From: Anolis carolinensis
Taxonomy: Eukaryota
NCBI RefSeq assembly: GCF_035594765.1
Contig: NW_026943824.1
Span: 8,140,317 to 8,204,316, forward strand
Length of the DNA stretch: 64,000 bases
Direction of reading: 5' to 3'
The notes beneath the pieces were generated by a model. It was given only the letters and a program-made list of their open reading frames with translations. It did not search any database and was not told the origin of the DNA. The translations under genes were made by a program, and so were the position numbers. Shown piece by piece: positions 21,155 to 58,000 of the stretch; the first letter of the stretch is position 1; each line of letters starts with the position of its first letter.

Positions 21155-21863
21155 ATGGGGGCAGGGGGTGAGGCACTGCGAAGAGGGGAGGGAAGGGGGC
21201 CCAATTCAGCCAGCCTCATCCAAGTAAGCATTTCCTCTGAGTCTATTTTTCCTTGCAGGGAGCAAATGTGTGGGGCCTGGAGGAGCCCTACCTCGAAGCC
21301 AGGTAAGTTGGAGCAGGCCTGGGCCAACTTGGGCTCTCCCTCCTGGTGTTTTGGACTTCAACTCCCGCCATTCCTAACCGCCTCAGGCCCTTTCCTTTCC
21401 CCCCTCAGCCGCTTAAGCGGCTGAGGGGGGAAAGGAAGGGGCCTGAGGCGGTTAGGAATGGCGGGAGTTGAAGTCCAAAACACCAGGAGGGAGGGCCTAA
21501 GTCCTATCCCTGTCCTTCAGGAGGAAGAGGAAGGCGAGGAGGCGGCCTTAATGGAGGCGTCGGGGGCCTCGTTGCTGCACGTCTTGGCCCAGAAGGGCGA
21601 CTGCGAAAGGGCCCTGCAACTCCTCTCAAGAGGCCCCAAGGAGGCCCTGCTCCGACGCCAGGTATCCATCATGGCGACTGTTGTTGTTGACTTGGTTGAT
21701 AACCCGCCCTGACCCCTCGCTGACCCCTCTTTCCTCCTCCTCAGGACGCCTCAGGCCGGACGCCGCTCTTTTGGGCCACCGAGAACCGGCGGAAGAGGAT
21801 GGCGGCGCTGCTGCTGGAGCACGGGGCAGACCCCGGCGCCAGGGATCACGTGAGCAAAGGGAG

Positions 21864-21904
<41 letters not shown>

Positions 21905-24900
21905 TTAGTTGTCATGACGACCACCCCCTCCGAGACCCCTCGCTTCCCATTCGCTCTTTGCCAAACGAGGCCCCGCCCCTAACGCCAGGCCCCGCCCCCT
22001 CTGCCTTGGTCTCCTCAGGCTGGGAACCTGTGCCTGCACCGGGCCGCCTTCGTAGGCAGCGCCCGCCTCGCGCGTCTCCTGCTGGACGCCGGCTCCGACC
22101 TGAACGCGCCCAACGCGCGCGGAGAGCGCCCTCTGGCCTTGGCTCGGAGGCAGCGGCGCCCCAAGTGCCTCGCGTGAGTGAGTCCAGAGGCAAGAGCGGG
22201 GAGGCGGGGCTTCCTGAGCAAGGGGCGGTTCCAGATGGCCACGCCCCCTCCTCTTCCCCTCCCTCCCTCCCTCCTCCAGGCTGCTTCTGTCGCTAGGCGC
22301 CACCCCTTCGCCGAAAGACCCGCCTCCTAGGATCCTCTGCAGGTGAGGGAAGTTGGGCGTGGCCACGGACAGGGGAGGGGCTTGTTCGGCAAACAACAGC
22401 AAACCCCGCCCCCTCTTAAAGGGACATCTCTCGCGGCCTGGAGGCCCTGCCTATCCCCTGCCTGAACGGCGTCGACGATGAGCGCGCTCCCGGGGACTTC
22501 CTCTACGTCACGCAGAGCCTTGTCTCGGACTCGGCGGAGGCGCCCCCTGGCGGGTGGGCGCGCAGGCAGGTCAGATGTCAAGGGGAGGGGGAGGCGGCCT
22601 GAGGCTGCTAGGAATGGTGGGAGTTGAAGTCCAAAACACCTCAAAGGCCCAAGTTTGCCTCGACTTTGGCCACGCCCCCTCCGAAAGAAGAGGCGGGCAC
22701 TCTTCCTCTTCCTTCTCCTCAGCGCTGCTCCTGCGGACCCGTCTGCCCCGCCCCCGACTGCTCCTGCTTGCTCCGCTCCGGCCGCAGCGCTGCCTGTTAC
22801 TCCCCGGTGAGAAGCCACGCTCCGTTCCTCTTGGGGGCGTCTCCTCGTGAGCCTGCCCGTCCCTGACCCCGCCCCTTTTGTTCCCCGCAGGAGGGCCGCC
22901 TTCTCCTATTGGACGCCGACGTCGCGAACGCCCTCTGCGAGTGCCACCTACTCTGCTCCTGCGGCAGCGCATGCGCGAACCGCGTGGCCCAGAGCGGGCT
23001 CCGGTGAGAGGGCACGCCCCCTGGCAGGGGAGGCCCCGCCCCCTGGCACCCCCTCAGCCAATGAGGCCCTCTCTCTCCCATCCTTTTGGCAGGACTCAGC
23101 TGCAGCTCTTCCGCTCCGCCGAGAGGGGCTGGGCAGTGCGCGCCATGCAGGACCTGGCTCCCGGCGCCTTCCTCTGCCAGTGAGTCCCTTCCTTGGCTGG
23201 TTTGTTTGTTTATCGTGTCATAAGCGAACCCAGGGTATTTAAAAGCACAAAACAAAGTTATACTAAATGCCCTTTGACAAGTAGCTGGACACGTCAGTGC
23301 CTCTGGTGTTGCTATGAGAAGGTTCTCCAGGGTGCATGTGGCAGGGCTCAGGCTGCATTGTATAATATTATAATGGAATACAATATAATACTATTAATAA
23401 TACAATATAATAATATTAATTATATATTATATATTAAATGCAATATTACTAATAATATTACCATATAATGATATAGTACAATATAGAAATTTAATGCTTA
23501 TATTGTGCTATGCTAATAATATATTGTATGTTCATTTGATTTGTAAGCCGCTCTGAGTCGCCTTCAGGGTGAGAAGAATGGGATATAAATGTAGTAAATA
23601 ATAAATAAATAAATGTAATAGGTGGTCTGTGGTTCACTCTTCTCCACTCTTGGCATGCCTTCCAAGTCGCCCAGTCTTCTGTGTGCCCAGGAGGGAGTCT
23701 CTCATCTGGTATCGGCCACTGATTGAGGTTCCAGCTTTTAGCCTGCCACTTTTGGATTCTTGCTTGCTGAGGTGTTTCCTGCCAGTATCTCTGTAGATAT
23801 TAGGAAAACTATTTCTGGATTTAAGGCGGTGGTGGCTGATATCCAAACATTGGGTATGCGCATTCAGCAGCAGAGCAGCCAAGCGCAAGAGCAGATGCCT
23901 TCACGGTTTCTGGTTGTGATCCCCAGGTTGTGCCAGTCAGCTTTCATATGATATTAGTTCTAGCATCCCCTTTTTGCTTGATAGTCAAGCAGTGCTTCTC
24001 GTAAGTCAGAGCACGGTCTAGAGTGACTCCCAAGTATTTTGAGGTGCTGCAATGCTCCAGCAGGATTCTTTCCTAGATCATCCTCAGAGCTCAAGATGCT
24101 TGTCTGTTCTTAAGCAGACATCTGCAATTTAGATGGATTAAGGATCAACTGGTTTTCCCTGTAATGGGCCAGGAAGACATCTTTCCACCATGTCTCCTTT
24201 ACCATCAGATGGGAGCACTCTCCCCCCCCCTGCCCCCAAGGTCTAACTGCCATTCTGGACCGGAATGAAGAAGGCGGGGCCAGGAAGACATCTTTCCACC
24301 ATGTCTCCTGTATAAATTTAATGATATAATAATATTATAATATATTGTATATACATGTAATATTAAAAATAATATGATGTAATACAATGTAATTTGATAT
24401 ATAATATGATGTAATACAATGTAATAATTATTATATTCACTATTATAATTGTATATTTATATTACATGCAATATTACTAATAATATTGCAATATAGTCGT
24501 ATAGTCATAAGAACCCCGGTGGCGAAGTGCGTTAAAGCACTGAGCTGGAGACTGAAAGGTCCCAGGTTCAAACCCCGGGAGCGGCGTGAGCAGCCGCTTT
24601 TAGCTCCAGCTACTGGCCAACCTAGCAGTTCAAAAACATGCCAATGTGAGTAGATCAATAGGTACCGCTCCGGCAGGAAGGTAACGGAGCTCCATGCAGT
24701 CATGCCGGCCACATGACCTTGCCGGACAACGCCGGTTCTTCGGCTTAGAAATAGAAATGAGCACCAACCTCCAGAGTCAGACATGACTGGACTTAACGTC
24801 AGGGGAAACCTTTACCTTTTTATATTAATATTATAATATATTGTATATACATGTAATATTAATAATATTATGATGTAATACAATATAATAATTATAATTC

Positions 24901-26421
24901 ACTATTATAATTGTATATTTATATTACATGCAATATTACTAATAATACTGTAATATAATAGTGTAATATAATATATTATATGTATGTATATACTTGTAAA
25001 CCGCTCTGAGTCCCCTTCGGGGTGAGAAGGACGGGATACAAATGTCGCAAATAAATCTATATATATAAAAGAGTGATGGCATCAGGGCAGCGGACAAAAC
25101 AACAAAACTACAGGCCCCCCAACCTCGAAATTTGACAACACAACCCATCATTCACGGCTCTAGGTTGATACAACAAAAAGAAAAGTAAAATAAAGTCCTA
25201 GTTACAGGGAGAGGAATAATAGTTTTTATCCAATTGCTGCCAGTTTGAAGGCTAAGCTCCGCCCATTTGGTCTCCTAGCAACCTCCTCAGCCCAGGGGAC
25301 AGGCACAGTTAGGCCTCACTTAGGCCTCTTCCACAGATTATCAGATTTTAACTGAATTATATGGCAGTGTAGACTCAAGGCCCTTCCACACAGTTATATA
25401 ACCCATTTAGAATCTTATATTATCTGCTTTGAACTGGATTATCTTGACTCCACACTGCCATATAATCCACTTCAGTGTGCATACTAAACATAAAGACAAC
25501 CATACAACAGACATTCAATACCATCACTACCTCAACAATTTCTCACCAACACCACCAGACAACGCCACAGCAACGCATGGCCGGTCACAGCTAGTAAATA
25601 ATAATAAGAGACCAAAAGCTTTGGAGAGTTTCTGTTCAACCATGTCAATGTTCCCTGCTTGAGCAGTGATGGCACAATCGTCAGCATAGATGATTTGAAG
25701 TTGAAGTCCAAAACACCTGGAGGGCCTAAGTTTGCCCATGTCTGGTCTAACCTCCTCCCTGCCTCATTCGCAGGTACTTTGGGGAGCTGGTCTCCGAGGA
25801 GGAGGCGCGGAGGAAGGAGGAAGAAGAGGCTGCCCCTGGCTACTGCTTCATGCTGGGCGCCCAGGTGACGTCACCCTCCCACTCTAGGCAGCGGGTCCCT
25901 CCTCTCCTCTCCTCTCCTCTGACCTCACCTCACCTCTCTCTCTCTGTCTCCCCCTGGAGGTCGGGCGCGGGTGCTGCCTAGACGGCCGTCGCTATGGCAA
26001 CGTGGCCCGCTTCTTGAACCACTCCTGCCGTCCCAACTTGGTGGCACTTCCAGTCTTCACGGGGCTGGAGGTCCCCGGAGTCGCCTTCTTCGTCTCCTCG
26101 AGGGGCATCCGGGCCGGGGAGGAGCTGGGGTGAGGAGGAGGCGTGGCTTCCACGGAGGGGCGTGGCCACGGAATCGAGGGCGGGGCCACCAGCGTTTGCC
26201 TTCTTTCCAGGTTCGACTACGGAGACGACTTCTGGGCGGCGCGACTGAGCCGAGGGATGTCCTGCCACTGTGGGGAGGCTCTCTGCCGCTTCCCTGCTTC
26301 TCGGGAAGCCCCGCCCCCTCAGGAAGCCCCGCCCCGCGGCTTCGCCTTCAAGACCCTGCGCTGCCCGGCTGAGAGGCAGGGAAAGGGGCGGGGACCTGTT
26401 GTAGCCCCTGCGGGCCAATAA
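21155..26421 (+). CDS. Unnamed EHMT (G9a/GLP)-like lysine methyltransferase: ~3-4 ankyrin repeats + pre-SET + SET + post-SET, ~474 aa, 13 coding exons
   Basis: Exons 21155-21167, 21259-21302, 21521-21661, 21745-21849, 22019-22173, 22280-22342, 22422-22569, 22723-22806, 22891-23003, 23093-23179, 25774-25864, 25960-26129, 26211-26421 total 1425 nt, open and phase-consistent. Motifs: TPLFWATE, NLCLHRAAFVG, DISRGLEALPIPCLNGVD, 9 pre-SET Cys, RGWAVRAMQDL, YFGELVS, YGNVARFLNHSCRPNL, GEELGFDYGDDFW, CHCGEALC. The two 5'-most exons are less certain than the rest. Confidence 0.88.
21315..21498. mobile_element. Palindromic hAT-type MITE (related copies or fragments at ~9233-9337, 22596-22660, 25695-25745, 26490-26667, 35404-35560, 62658-62795)
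   Basis: Near-perfect hairpin centred on CCCCTCAGCCGCTTAAGCGGCTGAGGGG, with arms GTTTTGGACTTCAACTCCC / GGGAGTTGAAGTCCAAAAC. Confidence 0.75.
21868..21900. repeat. (AG)n microsatellite
   Basis: Read directly from the sequence. Confidence 0.95.
23200..24170 (-). mobile_element. Vingi-like LINE RT/3' fragment, interrupted by an AT-rich L2-tail SINE (~23365-23612)
   Basis: Minus-strand translation includes KYLGVTLDRALTYEKHCLTIKQK...KLTGTTWGSQPETVKASALALGCSAAE, typical of ingi/Vingi-clade RT. Confidence 0.6.
24511..24819 (+). mobile_element. Sauria-type SINE
   Basis: tRNA-like head GGTGGCGAAGTGCGTTAAAGCACTGAGCTG...AGGTTCAAACCCC, conserved body, ACCTTT tail. Confidence 0.85.
25056..25594 (+). 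mobile_element. Non-autonomous Helitron
   Basis: Starts TC and ends CTAG, inserted between A and T, with a GC-rich subterminal segment GCATGGCCGGTCACAG. Related copies at 43039-43527 and 44916-45371. Confidence 0.75.
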
Positions 26422-26422
26422 A
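26417..26422 (+). terminator. AATAAA overlapping the TAA stop of the EHMT-like gene
   Basis: CAA TAA A: the stop codon lies inside the hexamer. Confidence 0.55.
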
Positions 26423-26873
26423 CGCCTGTTGAAGGAATTCGCCGGAGAGTGCCCGCCTCTTTTTTCGGAGTGGGCGTGGCCAAAGTTGAGGCAAACTTGG
26501 GCCTGTCAGGTGTTTTGGACTTCAACTCCCACCATTCCTAGCAGCCTCAGGCCCTTTCCTTTTCCCCCTCAGCCGCTTAAGCGGCTGAGGGGGAAAAGGA
26601 AAGGGCCTGAGGCTGCTAGGAATGGTGGGAGTTGAAGTCCAAAACGCCTCAAAGGCCCAAGTTCGCCTCTAGGAATTGGGCCTTCTCTGGTTGAGCCAGA
26701 ACAGGCCTCCTTGGCAGCCCCTCACTTGGGCCAGGCCTCTCCCCTCAGGTTGATGATGATGATGATGATATGAGAGGCTGCGTTGGCGAGGGAGGGCCGG
26801 CAGGGGGCAGCTGAGAGGCCTCCACTTCCTCGGCTGGAGAACCCTGCAGAGCCTCCTCCTCCTCTTTTGCACC

Positions 26874-55006: not shown

Positions 55007-58000
55007 ATGGGCGACTCGGAGGACGAGTTCCGGCAGCAGCAGCGATGGCGGCAGGCGGGAGAGGGGGAAGCAAAGCGGAAGCGCGGCGGCTCTTCCCGGG
55101 AGGCTTCCTCCAAGCGGCGCCGGAGGGCGAAAAGCAAAGAGGAAGAGGCGGACCTGCAGCTGGCGCTGGCCCTCTCCCGCTCCCTCCACCCGGAAGAGGA
55201 GGAATCCCGGAAGCAGCGCCCTCTGGAGGCGGAGGCGAGGAAGCGCAGGAAGAAGGGCACTTCCGGAGCAGGTCAGGCAAACCTGGGCCTTTATTCCAGG
55301 TGTTTTGGACTACAACTCCCACACGCTTGAACCCTCCTTCCTATGACTTACCCTCACACTTTGAACCCTCCTCATGTCTCCTCTCAGCCTTCTCTTCTGT
55401 GGCTACACATGCCCAGCTCTTTAAGCCACTCCTCATAGGGATTATTCTCAATACATTTCTCATCCAAGCTAGGAGCTCTTCCGGATGATTGTTTAATATT
55501 TTAATTGTGTCTGTTTTAAATCATGACTTGTTAATTTGTTTTTTAAATGCATTCTTGATGCCTTAACTGTTGATTTTATGATATTATATGATTGCATTGG
55601 GCTTGCCCCTGTGTGAGCCGCTCCGAGTCCCCGTTGGGGAGATGGAGGCGGCATACAAAAATAAAATTATTATTATATTTTATTTTATGACACAGCAAAC
55701 AAGATAGATATACTGGATTTCCTATCACAAAATCACAAGTCAAACACTTCCCAAGTGTCTAGGACTGTGTGATGTATTTTTGGATGATGTGTGTAGATTC
55801 CAGTAGGGTGGTCTTTTGCAGTTGGCAGATCATAATTTTGTCAATGTCTATTGTTTCCAAATGCCGGCTGAGATCTTTTGGCACGGCACCCAATGTGCCG
55901 ATCACCACTGGGACCACCTGCACTGGTTTCTGCCAGAGTCTTTGAAGTTCAATCTTGAGGTCCTGATAGCGGCTGAGTTTTTCCTGTTGTTTTTCGTCAA
56001 TGCGACTGTCACCTGGGATGGCGACATCAATGATCCAAACCTTTTTCTTTTCCACAACTGTGATGTCTGGTGTGTTGTGTTCCAGAACTTTGTCAGTCTG
56101 AATTCGGAAGTCCCACAGTATCTTTGCATGCTCATTTTCCACAACCTTTGCAGGTTTGCAGTTCTTTACTGCAGGGAGGTGGTACTTGAGGCATAAGTTC
56201 CAATGAATCATTTGGGCCACATAGTTGTGCCTCTGTTTGTCTGTGCAATTTTCTTATAGCAGCTGAGGAGGTGATAAATGGTTTCGGCGGTTTCCTTGCA
56301 CAGTCTGCATTTTGGGTCATCAACTGATTTTTCGATCTTGGCCTTGATTGCATTTGTTCTGATGGCTTGCTCCTGGGCTGCAAGGATCAGGCCTTCTGTC
56401 TCCTTCTTCAGGGTCCCATTCGTGAGCCAGAGCCAGGTCTTCTCCTTATCAGCTTTTCCTTCAATTTTGTCAAGGAACTTTCCATGCAATGTTTTGTTGT
56501 GCCAGCTGTCAGCTCTAGTTTGTAGTGCGGATTTCTTGTACTGGTTTTTTGTCTGCTGTGCTTTGAGGAGTTTCTGATTTTTGACTTCAATCAAAGCAGG
56601 TTCTTCACTTTGCTTGACATATTCTGCCAGGGCATGTTCTTCTTCTTTGACTGCTTGTTTGACTTGTAAGAGTCCTCTGCCCCCTGATCTTCTAGGCAGA
56701 TACAGCCGGTCAACATCACTGCGAGGGTGCAGGGAATGATGAATGGTCATGAGTTTTCTTGTTTTTCTGTCCAAATTATCCAGTTCCGCCTGTGTCCAGT
56801 TTATGATGCCAGCAGTATATCTTATGACAGGTATGGCCCAGGTGTTTATGGCCTTGATGGTGTTGCCTCCATTGAGCTTGCTTTTGAGAATTTTTCTGAC
56901 CCTTTGTGTGTATTCTTTGCTGACCAGTTTTCACATGTTCATGCTTGATGTTGTCCAGCTGTAATATGCCCAGATATTTATAGGCCTCTGGCTGGTGACA
57001 CTTTATTGTTTGGCCATTAGGCATATTTATGCCCTCACTTTCAGTGATTTTTCCCTTCTTCAATGCCACTGTTGAACATTTGTCCAAACCAAACTCCATG
57101 CTGATATCAGTGCTAAAAATTCGGACAGTGTTAGTCAGAGACTGGATTTCAGTTTCCGTTTTCCCATACAGCTTCAGGTCATCCATGTACATCAGATGCG
57201 AAATTTTGTGAGATTTCTTAGATGTTTGATAGCCAAGATTTGTTTTTTGTAAGATTGTTGACAGAGGGATCATGGCAATAATGAAAAGCAGAGGGGACAA
57301 TGAGTCTCCCTGGAAAATTCCTCTCCCGATGTTGACAAGTCCATAGCTTTCATTTCCAATAAACAGTTCAGTTTTCCAGTGCTCCATCATGTTTTCAATA
57401 AAGGTGCCAATGTTTTTANNNNNNNNNNNNNNNNNNNNNNNNNNNNNNNNNNNNNNNNNNNNNNNNNNNNNNNNNNNNNNNNNNNNNNNNNNNNNNNNNN
57501 NNNNNNNNNNNNNNNNNNNNNNNNNNNNNNNNNNNNNNNNNNNNNNNNNNNNNNNNNNNNNNNNNNATCATTTGAGTCGCCCTCCTCTGGACACTTTCCA
57601 GCTTGTTGACATCTCCCTCAAACTGCAGTGCCCAGAATTGGACACAGTGTGATTCTAGGTGTGGTCTGACCAAGGCAGAATAGAGGGGAACATGACTTCC
57701 TTGGATCTAGACACTAGACTCCTTTTAGTGCAGGCCATAATCCCATTGGCTTTTTTAGCTGCCACATGACATTGTTGGCTCATGTTTAACTTGTTGTCCT
57801 CTTCCTTTTCATCTCCTCTTCTTTCTGCTGCAGGGAGGGGCCGCTGCCGGAAGCCCCCCCGCTCTCCGCCTCCACTGCTGCTGCCGCAGGACCCAGCCAA
57901 GACCCGCCAGGAGACGGAGGCCCGTGTGGCTTCACTGCTGCTGCGGCCTGAGGCGGCACCGCCTCCCCGCACCCCTCCGCTGCCATCCAGCCGCCTCTGG

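What the first reader, a model, noticed from the sequence alone, without database searches (positions are those of the whole stretch)
21155..26421. Intact miniature third EHMT (G9a/GLP)-family methyltransferase gene at a locus where human has none
Seen: 13 exons splice into one 1425-nt open frame with no stop or frameshift. It encodes ~3-4 ankyrin repeats, all nine pre-SET cysteines, the SET motifs (GWAV, YFGE, RFLNHSCRPN, ELGFDYG with Phe at the Phe/Tyr switch and the catalytic Tyr) and the post-SET CxCx4C. Known: from the ankyrin region onward, the exon junctions match those I recall for EHMT1/2 (RD-x|xxNxCLH, R|DIxRG, GLR|xxLQL, FxCx|YxGE, ELG|FDYG). Mammals have only EHMT1 and EHMT2, both >1000 aa and neither on 16p13.3. 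Inference: this is a DNA-level duplicate, not a retrocopy. It lost the long N-terminus and first ankyrins, diverged strongly, and kept the Zn/SAM/catalytic residues, so it may be an uncharacterised sauropsid lysine methyltransferase. The ORF track shows it only as scattered fragments.
Basis: partly seen in the sequence, partly recalled or inferred. Interest (0 to 1): 0.9.

Follow-up and report, generated by a model that had tools for sequence, protein, structure and literature searches.

The report
Short squamate-only EHMT-like methyltransferase gene
This lizard window holds an intact, selectively constrained 13-exon gene for a miniature relative of the histone methyltransferases G9a/GLP; it sits between PDIA2 and RGS11, was found only in lizards and snakes, is labelled only "EHMT1-like" by automatic annotation, and has no study in the papers I searched.

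Summary
Thirteen + strand exons (21155-21167 to 26211-26421) have canonical AG/GT sites. They sum to 1425 nt, 474 codons plus TAA, and AATAAA overlaps the stop. They encode three ankyrin repeats, a nine-cysteine pre-SET, a SET domain with the SAM and catalytic residues kept, and a post-SET CxCx4C.

The gene is not unannotated. Orthologues of 370-590 aa, named "EHMT1-like" by NCBI, occur in geckos, skinks, lacertids, an amphisbaenian, a monitor, iguanians and snakes. In anole, gecko and snake they lie between AXIN1/PDIA2 and RGS11. Two protein searches found no member outside squamates.

All ten intron positions and phases from the ankyrin region to post-SET match fish EHMT1 and EHMT2, so this is a DNA-level duplicate. 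dN/dS against Anolis sagrei is 0.18.

Family-specific features:
- a conserved N-terminal MGxxxS[K/R] motif that fits the N-myristoylation consensus;
- loss of the I-SET acidic residues;
- a conserved C-terminal RGFAxK[S/T] tail.

The parent gene is unresolved, with a weak lean to EHMT1. No paper on this gene was found.

The parts
21155..21167 (+). Exon 1 (13 nt): ATG plus 3.3 codons, donor GTGAGG. With exon 2 it encodes MGAGGSKC..., which fits the N-myristoylation consensus.
   Evidence: The same 13-nt first exon is present in both A. sagrei copies and in snake DNA at L004:9447.
21259..21302 (+). Exon 2 (44 nt)
   Evidence: tblastn of A. sagrei P0151; AG/GT sites and frame.
21521..21661 (+). 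Exon 3 (141 nt): acidic linker and first, degenerate ankyrin repeat
   Evidence: No Pfam Ank hit for this exon.
21745..21849 (+). Exon 4 (105 nt): ankyrin repeat.
   Evidence: Pfam Ank E 1.4e-7. Alignment. Cage residues from PMC13626213. Same 105-nt exon in fish EHMT1 and EHMT2.
22019..22173 (+). Exon 5 (155 nt): ankyrin repeat. Arg at 22040-22042 replaces the third cage Trp (human W912).
   Evidence: The EHMT1 ankyrin structure 3b7b matches as a single stretch.
22280..22342 (+). Exon 6 (63 nt): shortened linker. Anolis lacks about 36 alignment columns, the last ankyrin repeat, that other squamates keep.
   Evidence: Family alignments.
22422..22569 (+). Exon 7 (148 nt): N-terminal part of pre-SET (DISRGLE...PIPCLNGVD)
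   Evidence: Pfam Pre-SET. Solved structures: EHMT1 32.3 bits, EHMT2 30.8 bits.
22723..22806 (+). Exon 8 (84 nt): first five pre-SET cysteines (CxCx3Cx4CxC)
   Evidence: Intact in both A. sagrei copies, although the NCBI A. sagrei model skips it.
22891..23003 (+). Exon 9 (113 nt): last four pre-SET cysteines (Cx3CxCx3C) and the start of SET
23093..23179 (+). Exon 10 (87 nt): N-terminal part of SET with GWAV
   Evidence: Same 87-nt exon in fish EHMT1 and EHMT2.
25774..25864 (+). Exon 11 (91 nt): YFGE (Tyr equivalent to G9a Y1067) and I-SET. The GLP D1131 and D1145 equivalents are Glu and Met.
   Evidence: Residue roles from PMC2797608.
25960..26129 (+). Exon 12 (170 nt): SET core, with RFLNHSCRPN at 26008-26037
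   Evidence: Pfam SET E 6.4e-10. Solved structures: EHMT2 and EHMT1 at E about 1e-11. 91% identical to A. sagrei.
26211..26421 (+). Exon 13 (211 nt): FDY at 26212-26220 (Phe switch and catalytic Tyr), post-SET CxCx4C at 26263-26286, family-specific tail motif RGFAFKT at 26335-26355, and TAA.
   Evidence: Tail conservation.
26417..26422 (+). AATAAA poly(A) signal overlapping the stop codon

Best explanation
This is the anole orthologue of a squamate-restricted third EHMT-type (KMT1) gene.

Origin. It arose by a DNA-level duplication of the 3' half of an EHMT gene, weakly favoured to be EHMT1. The copy landed in the AXIN1/PDIA2-RGS11 interval before the living squamate lineages split, and it has been kept under purifying selection.

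Product. The protein has 474 residues: an N-terminal MGxxxS[K/R] motif, three ankyrin repeats in Anolis (four in most other squamates), a Zn3Cys9 pre-SET, a SET domain, a post-SET zinc site and a basic C-terminal tail with an invariant Lys.

Most likely mechanism (inferred, not shown). It is an active SAM-dependent protein-lysine mono/di-methyltransferase. The SAM-binding pseudoknot, both active-site Tyr residues and the Phe of the Phe/Tyr switch are kept. Its targeting and substrate choice probably differ from G9a/GLP for five reasons:
- the N-terminal cysteine-rich region and long N-terminus are absent;
- the start fits the N-myristoylation consensus;
- the first cage Trp is an invariant Arg, and in Anolis the third is Arg as well;
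- the I-SET acidic residues that contact the H3 tail are replaced;
- a three-residue deletion alters the HQDLRFPR loop.
For: Intact model: 13 exons, 1425 nt, all AG/GT.

Orthologues. Both A. sagrei copies keep every exon, splice site and frame. Over 451 codons dS is 0.32, dN is 0.057 and dN/dS is 0.18; each of the ankyrin, pre-SET and SET parts is at or below 0.25.

Family range. Members occur in Gekkota, Scincoidea, Lacertoidea, Anguimorpha, Iguania and Serpentes. Nothing outside squamates turned up in a single-sequence search or a profile search.

Synteny. AXIN1 - PDIA2(-) - gene(+) - RGS11(+) holds in the anole and the snake. The gecko has AXIN1 - gene - RGS11, with no PDIA2 called.

Gene structure. 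10 of 10 intron positions and phases are shared with fish EHMT1 and EHMT2.

Catalytic residues. The equivalents of G9a Y1067, F1152 and Y1154, plus NHxCxPN and all 13 zinc cysteines, are kept (roles in PMC2797608).

Fold. A model of the Podarcis member's catalytic part (pTM 0.74) matches solved GLP and G9a SET domains at TM 0.82-0.88. Identity is 48-49% to GLP and 43-45% to G9a.

New motifs. The N-terminal MGxxxS[K/R] motif is conserved in iguanians, lacertids, skinks, a gecko and snakes. The tail has invariant R-G and near-invariant K.
Against: No expression evidence.

No biochemical data exist. No paper on the gene was found in the library searched.

Many residues invariant in canonical EHMTs have changed. 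The window keeps 64 of the 89 such columns it covers, so loss of activity cannot be excluded.

The Anolis branch is very long (0.78) and has lost one ankyrin repeat.

The tree cannot place the family. It falls outside all canonical EHMTs, which is probably long-branch attraction. AU tests reject none of the placements tried.

The lean to EHMT1 is weak: 11 against 3 diagnostic columns, and only one of them is clearly derived.

Absence outside squamates rests on annotated proteins within a length filter, not on genome searches.
Confidence: 0.62

Rival explanations
1. The product is a modulator of G9a/GLP. It pairs with G9a or GLP through its SET domain and tunes or diverts their activity, with its own catalysis secondary. 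(G9a and GLP are known to pair through their SET domains; this is my own knowledge and was not tested here.)
For: The fold of the catalytic part is very close to GLP and G9a.
Against: The active-site Tyr/Phe/Tyr residues, the NHxCxPN motif and the zinc ligands are invariant across the family, which is what selection on catalysis would give. An N-terminal lipidation motif fits poorly with a chromatin-bound partner. No interface analysis was possible.
Confidence: 0.15
2. The product is a pseudoenzyme or adaptor. The protein is kept for binding through its remodelled ankyrin pocket and basic tail, but it no longer transfers methyl groups.
For: 25 of the 89 covered columns that are invariant in canonical EHMTs are changed in the window. 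These include CIDA to CLDG, FDLD to FMLG, GWGV to GWAV and a three-residue loop deletion.
Against: Every residue that PMC2797608 singles out for catalysis or product specificity is kept. dN/dS of the SET/post-SET exons is 0.23-0.25.
Confidence: 0.12
3. The gene is a decaying duplicate that happens still to be open, a pseudogene in progress.
For: Evolution is fast: only 52-57% identity between Anolis and Sceloporus. An ankyrin repeat is lost in Anolis. No transcript evidence was obtained.
Against: dN/dS is 0.18, with 90 synonymous against 55 non-synonymous differences. Open frames and splice sites are intact in three Anolis copies and in more than 15 squamates spanning the whole order. New N- and C-terminal motifs are conserved.
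Confidence: 0.04
4. It is the species' only EHMT1 or EHMT2, translocated, with its long N-terminus encoded elsewhere.
For: NCBI names it 'EHMT1-like' or 'EHMT2-like'.
Against: Canonical EHMT1 maps in Anolis to a scaffold syntenic with chicken 17 and human 9 (PMC6761961). The gene has its own conserved ATG exon about 2.7 kb from the 5' end of PDIA2. Its pre-SET/SET is only about 44% identical to canonical EHMTs, whereas invertebrate and fish EHMTs share 50-67%. I could not retrieve a canonical squamate EHMT2 protein with the tools.
Confidence: 0.02

Closest known systems
NCBI Gnomon models 'histone-lysine N-methyltransferase EHMT1-like' of squamates, for example Anolis sagrei XP_067329550.1 (480 aa), and models in Sceloporus, Podarcis, Rhineura, Eublepharis, Tiliqua, Hemicordylus, Pituophis and Paroedura ('EHMT2-like')
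   Same: Orthologues. They share the exon set and the architecture, and where loci were fetched (A. sagrei, Eublepharis, Pituophis) the AXIN1/PDIA2-RGS11 position. The window's exons are 80-97% identical at protein level to A. sagrei.
   Different: The A. sagrei model skips the conserved cysteine-rich exon 8 and retains intron 8, a path that is closed by a stop in the window. Most non-anole members keep one more ankyrin repeat. No protein of the window's own species appeared in the database searches.
EHMT1 (GLP, KMT1D)
   Same: Order of ankyrin repeats, pre-SET, SET and post-SET. All 10 intron positions and phases in that region. Catalytic Tyr/Phe/Tyr and zinc ligands. A family member's model matches solved GLP at TM 0.86-0.88 and 48-49% identity. 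11 of the 14 decided diagnostic columns are EHMT1-like.
   Different: - About 474 residues against about 1300.
- No cysteine-rich region (Pfam EHMT1-2_CRR) and no long N-terminus.
- 3-4 ankyrin repeats against 8.
- Cage W874 is Arg in all members, and W912 is Arg in Anolis.
- The I-SET D1131 and D1145 equivalents are lost.
- New myristoylation-type start and new C-terminal tail.
- Different chromosomal neighbourhood.
EHMT2 (G9a, KMT1C)
   Same: As for EHMT1. Exon 12 scores marginally higher against G9a: 46.9 against 45.9 bits.
   Different: As for EHMT1. Only 3 diagnostic columns are EHMT2-like, and identity to the model is 43-45%. The gene is not in an MHC class III type neighbourhood.
SETMAR and SUV39H1/2 (other KMT1 enzymes with pre-SET, SET and post-SET)
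   Same: The same three-part catalytic module. They are the next-best solved matches to exon 12.
   Different: They have no ankyrin repeats. Scores are much lower: 36 and 33 bits against 47. SETMAR forms the outgroup in the tree.
Colius striatus 'EHMT1-like' genes (XP_061856411.1, XP_061863811.1)
   Same: They are also short, lineage-specific EHMT-derived genes that keep pre-SET and SET.
   Different: They have no ankyrin repeats. They are of the canonical EYVGE / HQDxRFPR type and group with vertebrate EHMTs in the tree. They lie in tandem elsewhere, not in the PDIA2-RGS11 interval. They are an independent event.

Membership tests
EHMT / G9a-GLP subfamily of KMT1 SET-domain methyltransferases | Pre-SET with nine cysteines (Zn3Cys9) at canonical spacing | tested here: met
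   CxCx3Cx4CxC in exon 8 and Cx3CxCx3C in exon 9. They align with the canonical invariant cysteines.
EHMT / G9a-GLP subfamily of KMT1 SET-domain methyltransferases | SET domain with NHxCxPN, the active-site Tyr of (E/Q)Y(V/F)GE, and ELGFDY with the Phe switch and catalytic Tyr | tested here: met
   Pfam SET E 6e-10. All these columns are kept in the window and are invariant in the family. Residue roles from PMC2797608.
EHMT / G9a-GLP subfamily of KMT1 SET-domain methyltransferases | Post-SET CxCx4C zinc site | tested here: met
   SCHCGEALC at 26260-26286, the three cysteines spanning 26263-26286.
EHMT / G9a-GLP subfamily of KMT1 SET-domain methyltransferases | Ankyrin repeats directly upstream of pre-SET | tested here: met
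   Pfam Ank in exons 4 and 5. There are 3 repeats here and 4 in most squamates, against 8 in EHMT1 (PMC13626213).
EHMT / G9a-GLP subfamily of KMT1 SET-domain methyltransferases | Methyl-lysine aromatic cage in the ankyrin domain (human EHMT1 W874, W879, W912, E882) | tested here: not met
   The W874 equivalent is Arg in all 13 aligned members. The W912 equivalent is Arg in Anolis, Sceloporus and Pituophis. W879 and E882 are kept.
EHMT / G9a-GLP subfamily of KMT1 SET-domain methyltransferases | Long N-terminal half with the cysteine-rich region (Pfam PF21533, EHMT1-2_CRR) | tested here: not met
   PF21533 is listed for canonical fish EHMTs and for none of the short squamate proteins. The gene begins about 2.7 kb from the 5' end of PDIA2.
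EHMT / G9a-GLP subfamily of KMT1 SET-domain methyltransferases | Gene structure shared with EHMT1 and EHMT2 (descent by DNA duplication) | tested here: met
   10 of 10 intron positions and phases are identical to fish EHMT2 (L005) and fish EHMT1 (L006). Three exon lengths are the same or within one base: 105 nt, 155/156 nt and 87 nt.
EHMT / G9a-GLP subfamily of KMT1 SET-domain methyltransferases | Orthology to EHMT1 or EHMT2 by tree or synteny | tested here: not met
   The neighbours are AXIN1, PDIA2 and RGS11. In the tree the family is a separate long-branch clade. AU tests do not reject placement with vertebrate EHMTs (p 0.21), with EHMT1 (p 0.21) or with EHMT2 (p 0.14). It is a paralogue.
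EHMT / G9a-GLP subfamily of KMT1 SET-domain methyltransferases | I-SET acidic residues that contact the H3 tail (GLP D1131 and D1145) | tested here: not met
   They are Glu and Met in the window, and Ser/Thr and Val in most of the family (PMC2797608).
EHMT / G9a-GLP subfamily of KMT1 SET-domain methyltransferases | H3K9 mono/di-methyltransferase activity | not testable with these tools
   Needs an enzyme assay.
N-myristoylated proteins | N-terminal M-G-{EDRKHPFYW}-x-x-[STAGCN]-{P} (consensus quoted from my own knowledge of the PROSITE pattern) | tested here: met
   - Window: MGAGGSK.
- A. sagrei: MGAKGSK.
- Sceloporus: MGASGSK.
- Podarcis: MGLSESR.
- Tiliqua: MGLSGSR.
- Hemicordylus: MGLSESK.
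- Lerista: MGQGGSK.
- Gekko: MGLSASK.
- Pituophis DNA: MGLNESK.
. This is sequence only; lipidation itself was not tested.
Processed retrocopy | No introns, poly(A) tract, flanking target-site duplications | tested here: not met
   There are 12 introns, 10 of them at parental positions.

The most novel reading that the evidence does not exclude
The family is a lipid-anchored, extranuclear or membrane-proximal protein-lysine methyltransferase that squamates built from half an EHMT gene. Three things would define it. N-myristoylation would move it away from chromatin. A remodelled Arg/Trp/Trp/Glu ankyrin pocket and a de-acidified I-SET groove would give it non-histone substrates. The conserved C-terminal RGFAxK[S/T] motif, with an invariant Lys in an H3K9-like A-x-K-S/T setting, would be an automethylation site or pseudosubstrate that regulates it.
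Probability: 0.2. Interest if true: 0.75.

Novelty: new variant of a known kind. Interest (0 to 1): 0.55.

Why it matters
Vertebrates are usually said to have two EHMT enzymes. They are essential, slowly evolving read-write H3K9 methyltransferases.

Here an entire reptile order has kept a third, half-size paralogue, by my own dating for roughly 200 million years. That makes it a natural experiment in how a chromatin writer is repurposed.

It is also a candidate non-histone lysine methyltransferase, and a lineage-specific gene that standard annotation hides under the name 'EHMT1-like'. It is directly testable by expression, peptide-array methylation and myristoylation assays.

Tried and rejected
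There is no junction or expression evidence. Local comparisons masked them, and the repeat scan was laid beside them.

Sequencing runs. The look-up of sequencing runs listed 19 holders, none on record as RNA. This is uninformative.

Tail docking. Complex prediction with the gecko catalytic part, SAM and the C-terminal tail gave no answer, score 0.00. It is not evidence either way.

First structure model. The 13-sequence alignment gave a poor model: pLDDT 56, with pre-SET and tail below 35. It was replaced by a model from a 36-sequence alignment, in which the tail is still disordered, so there is no sign of docking.

Tree. It did not resolve the parent gene.

Per-exon comparison with solved human EHMT1 and EHMT2 was a tie for the anole exons. 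The ankyrin exons are swamped by designed ankyrin proteins.

Canonical squamate EHMTs. The third protein search returned only fish EHMT1 and EHMT2, so canonical squamate EHMT2 could not be shown. Two fish proteins had no gene on record.

Bird genes. The Colius 'EHMT1-like' genes were considered as possible orthologues and rejected on architecture, tree position and neighbours.

Joined product. It was not assembled for, or sent to, any search, fold or tree tool. Exons were searched by reference one at a time, and the A. sagrei and other squamate proteins stood in for the whole product.

Full report
**What is in the sequence**

On the + strand between 21155 and 26421 there are 13 exons. Every internal boundary is a canonical AG...GT.
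- A phase check that never builds the joined product gives 1425 nt: 474 sense codons and one terminal TAA. The six split codons read G, A, R, R, Q, G.
- AATAAA overlaps the stop at 26417.
- Pfam recognises ankyrin repeats in exons 4 and 5, Pre-SET in exons 7 and 9, and SET in exon 12.
- Against solved structures, exon 12 matches human EHMT2 and EHMT1 best at E about 1e-11. SUV39H2 and SETMAR follow.
- The nine pre-SET cysteines, GWAV, QYFGE, RFLNHSCRPN, ELG|FDYG and the post-SET CxCx4C are all present.

The joined product was not assembled for, or sent to, any search, fold or tree tool. Orthologous database proteins stood in for it.

**What it is**

A search of 1.84 billion representative proteins with exon 12 found a 91% identical protein. 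It is Anolis sagrei XP_067318297.1 'EHMT1-like', and its cluster also holds XP_067329550.1 of 480 aa.

With that protein as query, and then with a family profile, the only close relatives were short proteins of 311-592 aa. Most are named 'EHMT1-like' by NCBI. They come from:
- Gekkota: Eublepharis, Gekko, Paroedura, Sphaerodactylus
- Scincoidea: Tiliqua, Lerista, Hemicordylus
- Lacertoidea: Podarcis, Rhineura, Salvator
- Anguimorpha: Varanus
- Iguania: Anolis, Sceloporus
- Serpentes: Pituophis, Crotalus, Protobothrops, Ophiophagus, Ahaetulla

Every member found is a squamate. The next hits are fragments of canonical fish EHMTs at 36-37% identity.

The bird Colius has 'EHMT1-like' genes, but they are a separate event. 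They lack ankyrin repeats, are of the canonical EYVGE type, group with vertebrate EHMTs in the tree, and sit in tandem at another locus.

**Position**

PDIA2 lies on the minus strand at about 15.1-18.4 kb, head to head with the gene. The window is colinear with the A. sagrei locus, and RGS11 begins near 26.8 kb.
- The order AXIN1 - PDIA2(-) - gene(+) - RGS11(+) is found on two A. sagrei chromosome-scale records and in the snake Pituophis.
- The gecko Eublepharis has AXIN1 - gene - RGS11, with no PDIA2 called.

The gene has therefore held this place since before the living squamate lineages split. The date of roughly 200 million years is my own knowledge and was not tested.

**Origin**

I mapped exon boundaries of a fish EHMT2 (Gymnothorax) and a fish EHMT1 (Xiphias) on their genomic loci, and of the gecko, snake and anole genes.
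- All ten introns from the ankyrin region to post-SET have the same position and phase in all of them.
- Three exon lengths match or nearly match: 105 nt, 155/156 nt and 87 nt.

This shows a DNA-level duplication of the 3' half of an EHMT gene, not a retrocopy.

Which parent it came from is unresolved.
- In a maximum-likelihood tree the family is a long-branch clade outside all canonical EHMTs. The SETMAR root attaches inside it, which looks like long-branch attraction.
- AU tests do not reject placing it with vertebrate EHMTs (p 0.21), with EHMT1 (p 0.21) or with EHMT2 (p 0.14).
- Diagnostic columns lean to EHMT1, 11 against 3, but most of those states may be ancestral.
- A family member's model is 48-49% identical to human GLP and 43-45% to G9a.

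Canonical EHMT1 exists separately in Anolis, on a scaffold syntenic with chicken 17 and human 9 (PMC6761961). I could not retrieve a canonical squamate EHMT2.

**Is it functional?**

All 13 exons are open, with intact splice sites, in both A. sagrei copies.
- Over 451 codons dS is 0.32, dN is 0.057 and dN/dS is 0.18.
- By part, dN/dS is 0.12 for the ankyrin exons, 0.17 for pre-SET and 0.23 for SET/post-SET.

That is clear purifying selection.

The NCBI A. sagrei model skips the cysteine-rich exon 8 and retains intron 8. That path carries a stop in the window, and exon 8 is conserved, so the model with exon 8 is the better one.

Expression could not be tested. I worked beside those places afterwards.

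**How it probably works**

Kept, and invariant across the family (roles in PMC2797608):
- the SAM pseudoknot NHxCxPN;
- the Tyr equivalent to G9a Y1067;
- the Phe of the Phe/Tyr switch (F1152);
- the catalytic Tyr (Y1154);
- all 13 zinc cysteines.

A model of the Podarcis catalytic part (pTM 0.74) superposes on solved GLP and G9a at TM 0.82-0.88. This points to an active mono/di-methyltransferase.

Changed:
- The first Trp of the methyl-lysine cage (human EHMT1 W874) is an invariant Arg.
- In Anolis, Sceloporus and Pituophis the third cage Trp (W912) is also Arg. In human EHMT1 that same change lowers H3K9me binding without destabilising the domain (PMC13626213).
- The I-SET aspartates that contact the H3 tail are lost.
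- CIDA becomes CLDG, and three residues are deleted from the HQDLRFPR loop.
- The N-terminal cysteine-rich region is absent.

Gained:
- A start of the form MGxxxS[K/R], encoded by a 13-nt first exon plus exon 2. It is conserved from gecko to snake and fits the N-myristoylation consensus.
- A C-terminal tail RGFAxK[S/T] with invariant R-G and near-invariant K, absent from EHMT1 and EHMT2. G9a automethylates an ARKT motif that resembles H3 ARKS (PMC2175347). The tail Lys could therefore be an auto- or pseudosubstrate, but nothing here tests that. The complex prediction gave no answer, and the tail is disordered in the model.

I infer a catalytically competent lysine methyltransferase whose targeting and substrates differ from G9a/GLP. 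Catalysis, lipidation and substrate are inferences, not results.

**Novelty**

The sequences are public and machine-named. Literature searches for EHMT1-like or EHMT2-like, for EHMT1 with squamates and for EHMT2 with Anolis found no study of this gene.

It is a new variant of a known kind: an order-wide, long-retained, re-engineered EHMT paralogue. The finding is still real and worth an experiment.

Noticed in passing
window 21327-21502 and 26488-26669: Two perfect palindromic elements. Each has 88-91 nt arms, no spacer, and is 96-97% self-complementary. One lies in intron 2 of the gene and one just 3' of its poly(A) signal. They look like MITEs.
   Followed up: partly
L001:14494-14663 (A. sagrei), equivalent to window 22570-22890: The NCBI model XP_067329550.1 uses a shifted donor after exon 7, skips the conserved cysteine-rich exon 8 and retains intron 8. 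Exon 8 is intact in both A. sagrei copies, and the retained-intron path has a stop in the window. It is a likely mis-model.
   Followed up: yes
L001 (CM073883.1) and L002 (CM073884.1): A. sagrei carries the whole AXIN1/PDIA2/EHMT-like/RGS11 block on two chromosome-scale records. The exons are 98.3% identical and both copies are open. NCBI models only a 179-aa product on the second. Whether these are sex-chromosome gametologues or a recent duplication was not examined.
   Followed up: partly
L007 (Colius striatus CM054351.1) and protein P0116: The mousebird has at least three 'EHMT1-like' genes without ankyrin repeats. Two lie in tandem and one is on another record. They are of the canonical EYVGE type and are unrelated by position to the squamate family.
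   Followed up: partly
window 26422-26800; L004:16420-16877; L003:18607-20408: No gene is called between the EHMT-like gene and RGS11 in anole, snake or gecko. ARHGDIG, which lies between PDIA2 and RGS11 in human (my own knowledge), is not in that interval.
   Followed up: no
window 22280-22342 (exon 6): Anolis, both the window and A. sagrei, lacks about 36 alignment columns, the last ankyrin repeat. Sceloporus and all other squamates keep them. The Anolis branch is also the longest in the family tree (0.78).
   Followed up: partly
Proteins P0166/P0171 (Hemicordylus) and P0165/P0172 (Tiliqua): Scincoid lizards carry two copies of the short gene on the same contig, as lineage-specific duplicates.
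   Followed up: no
window 57419-57566: This is the only run of N in the window, 148 bases. It was left untouched.
   Followed up: no
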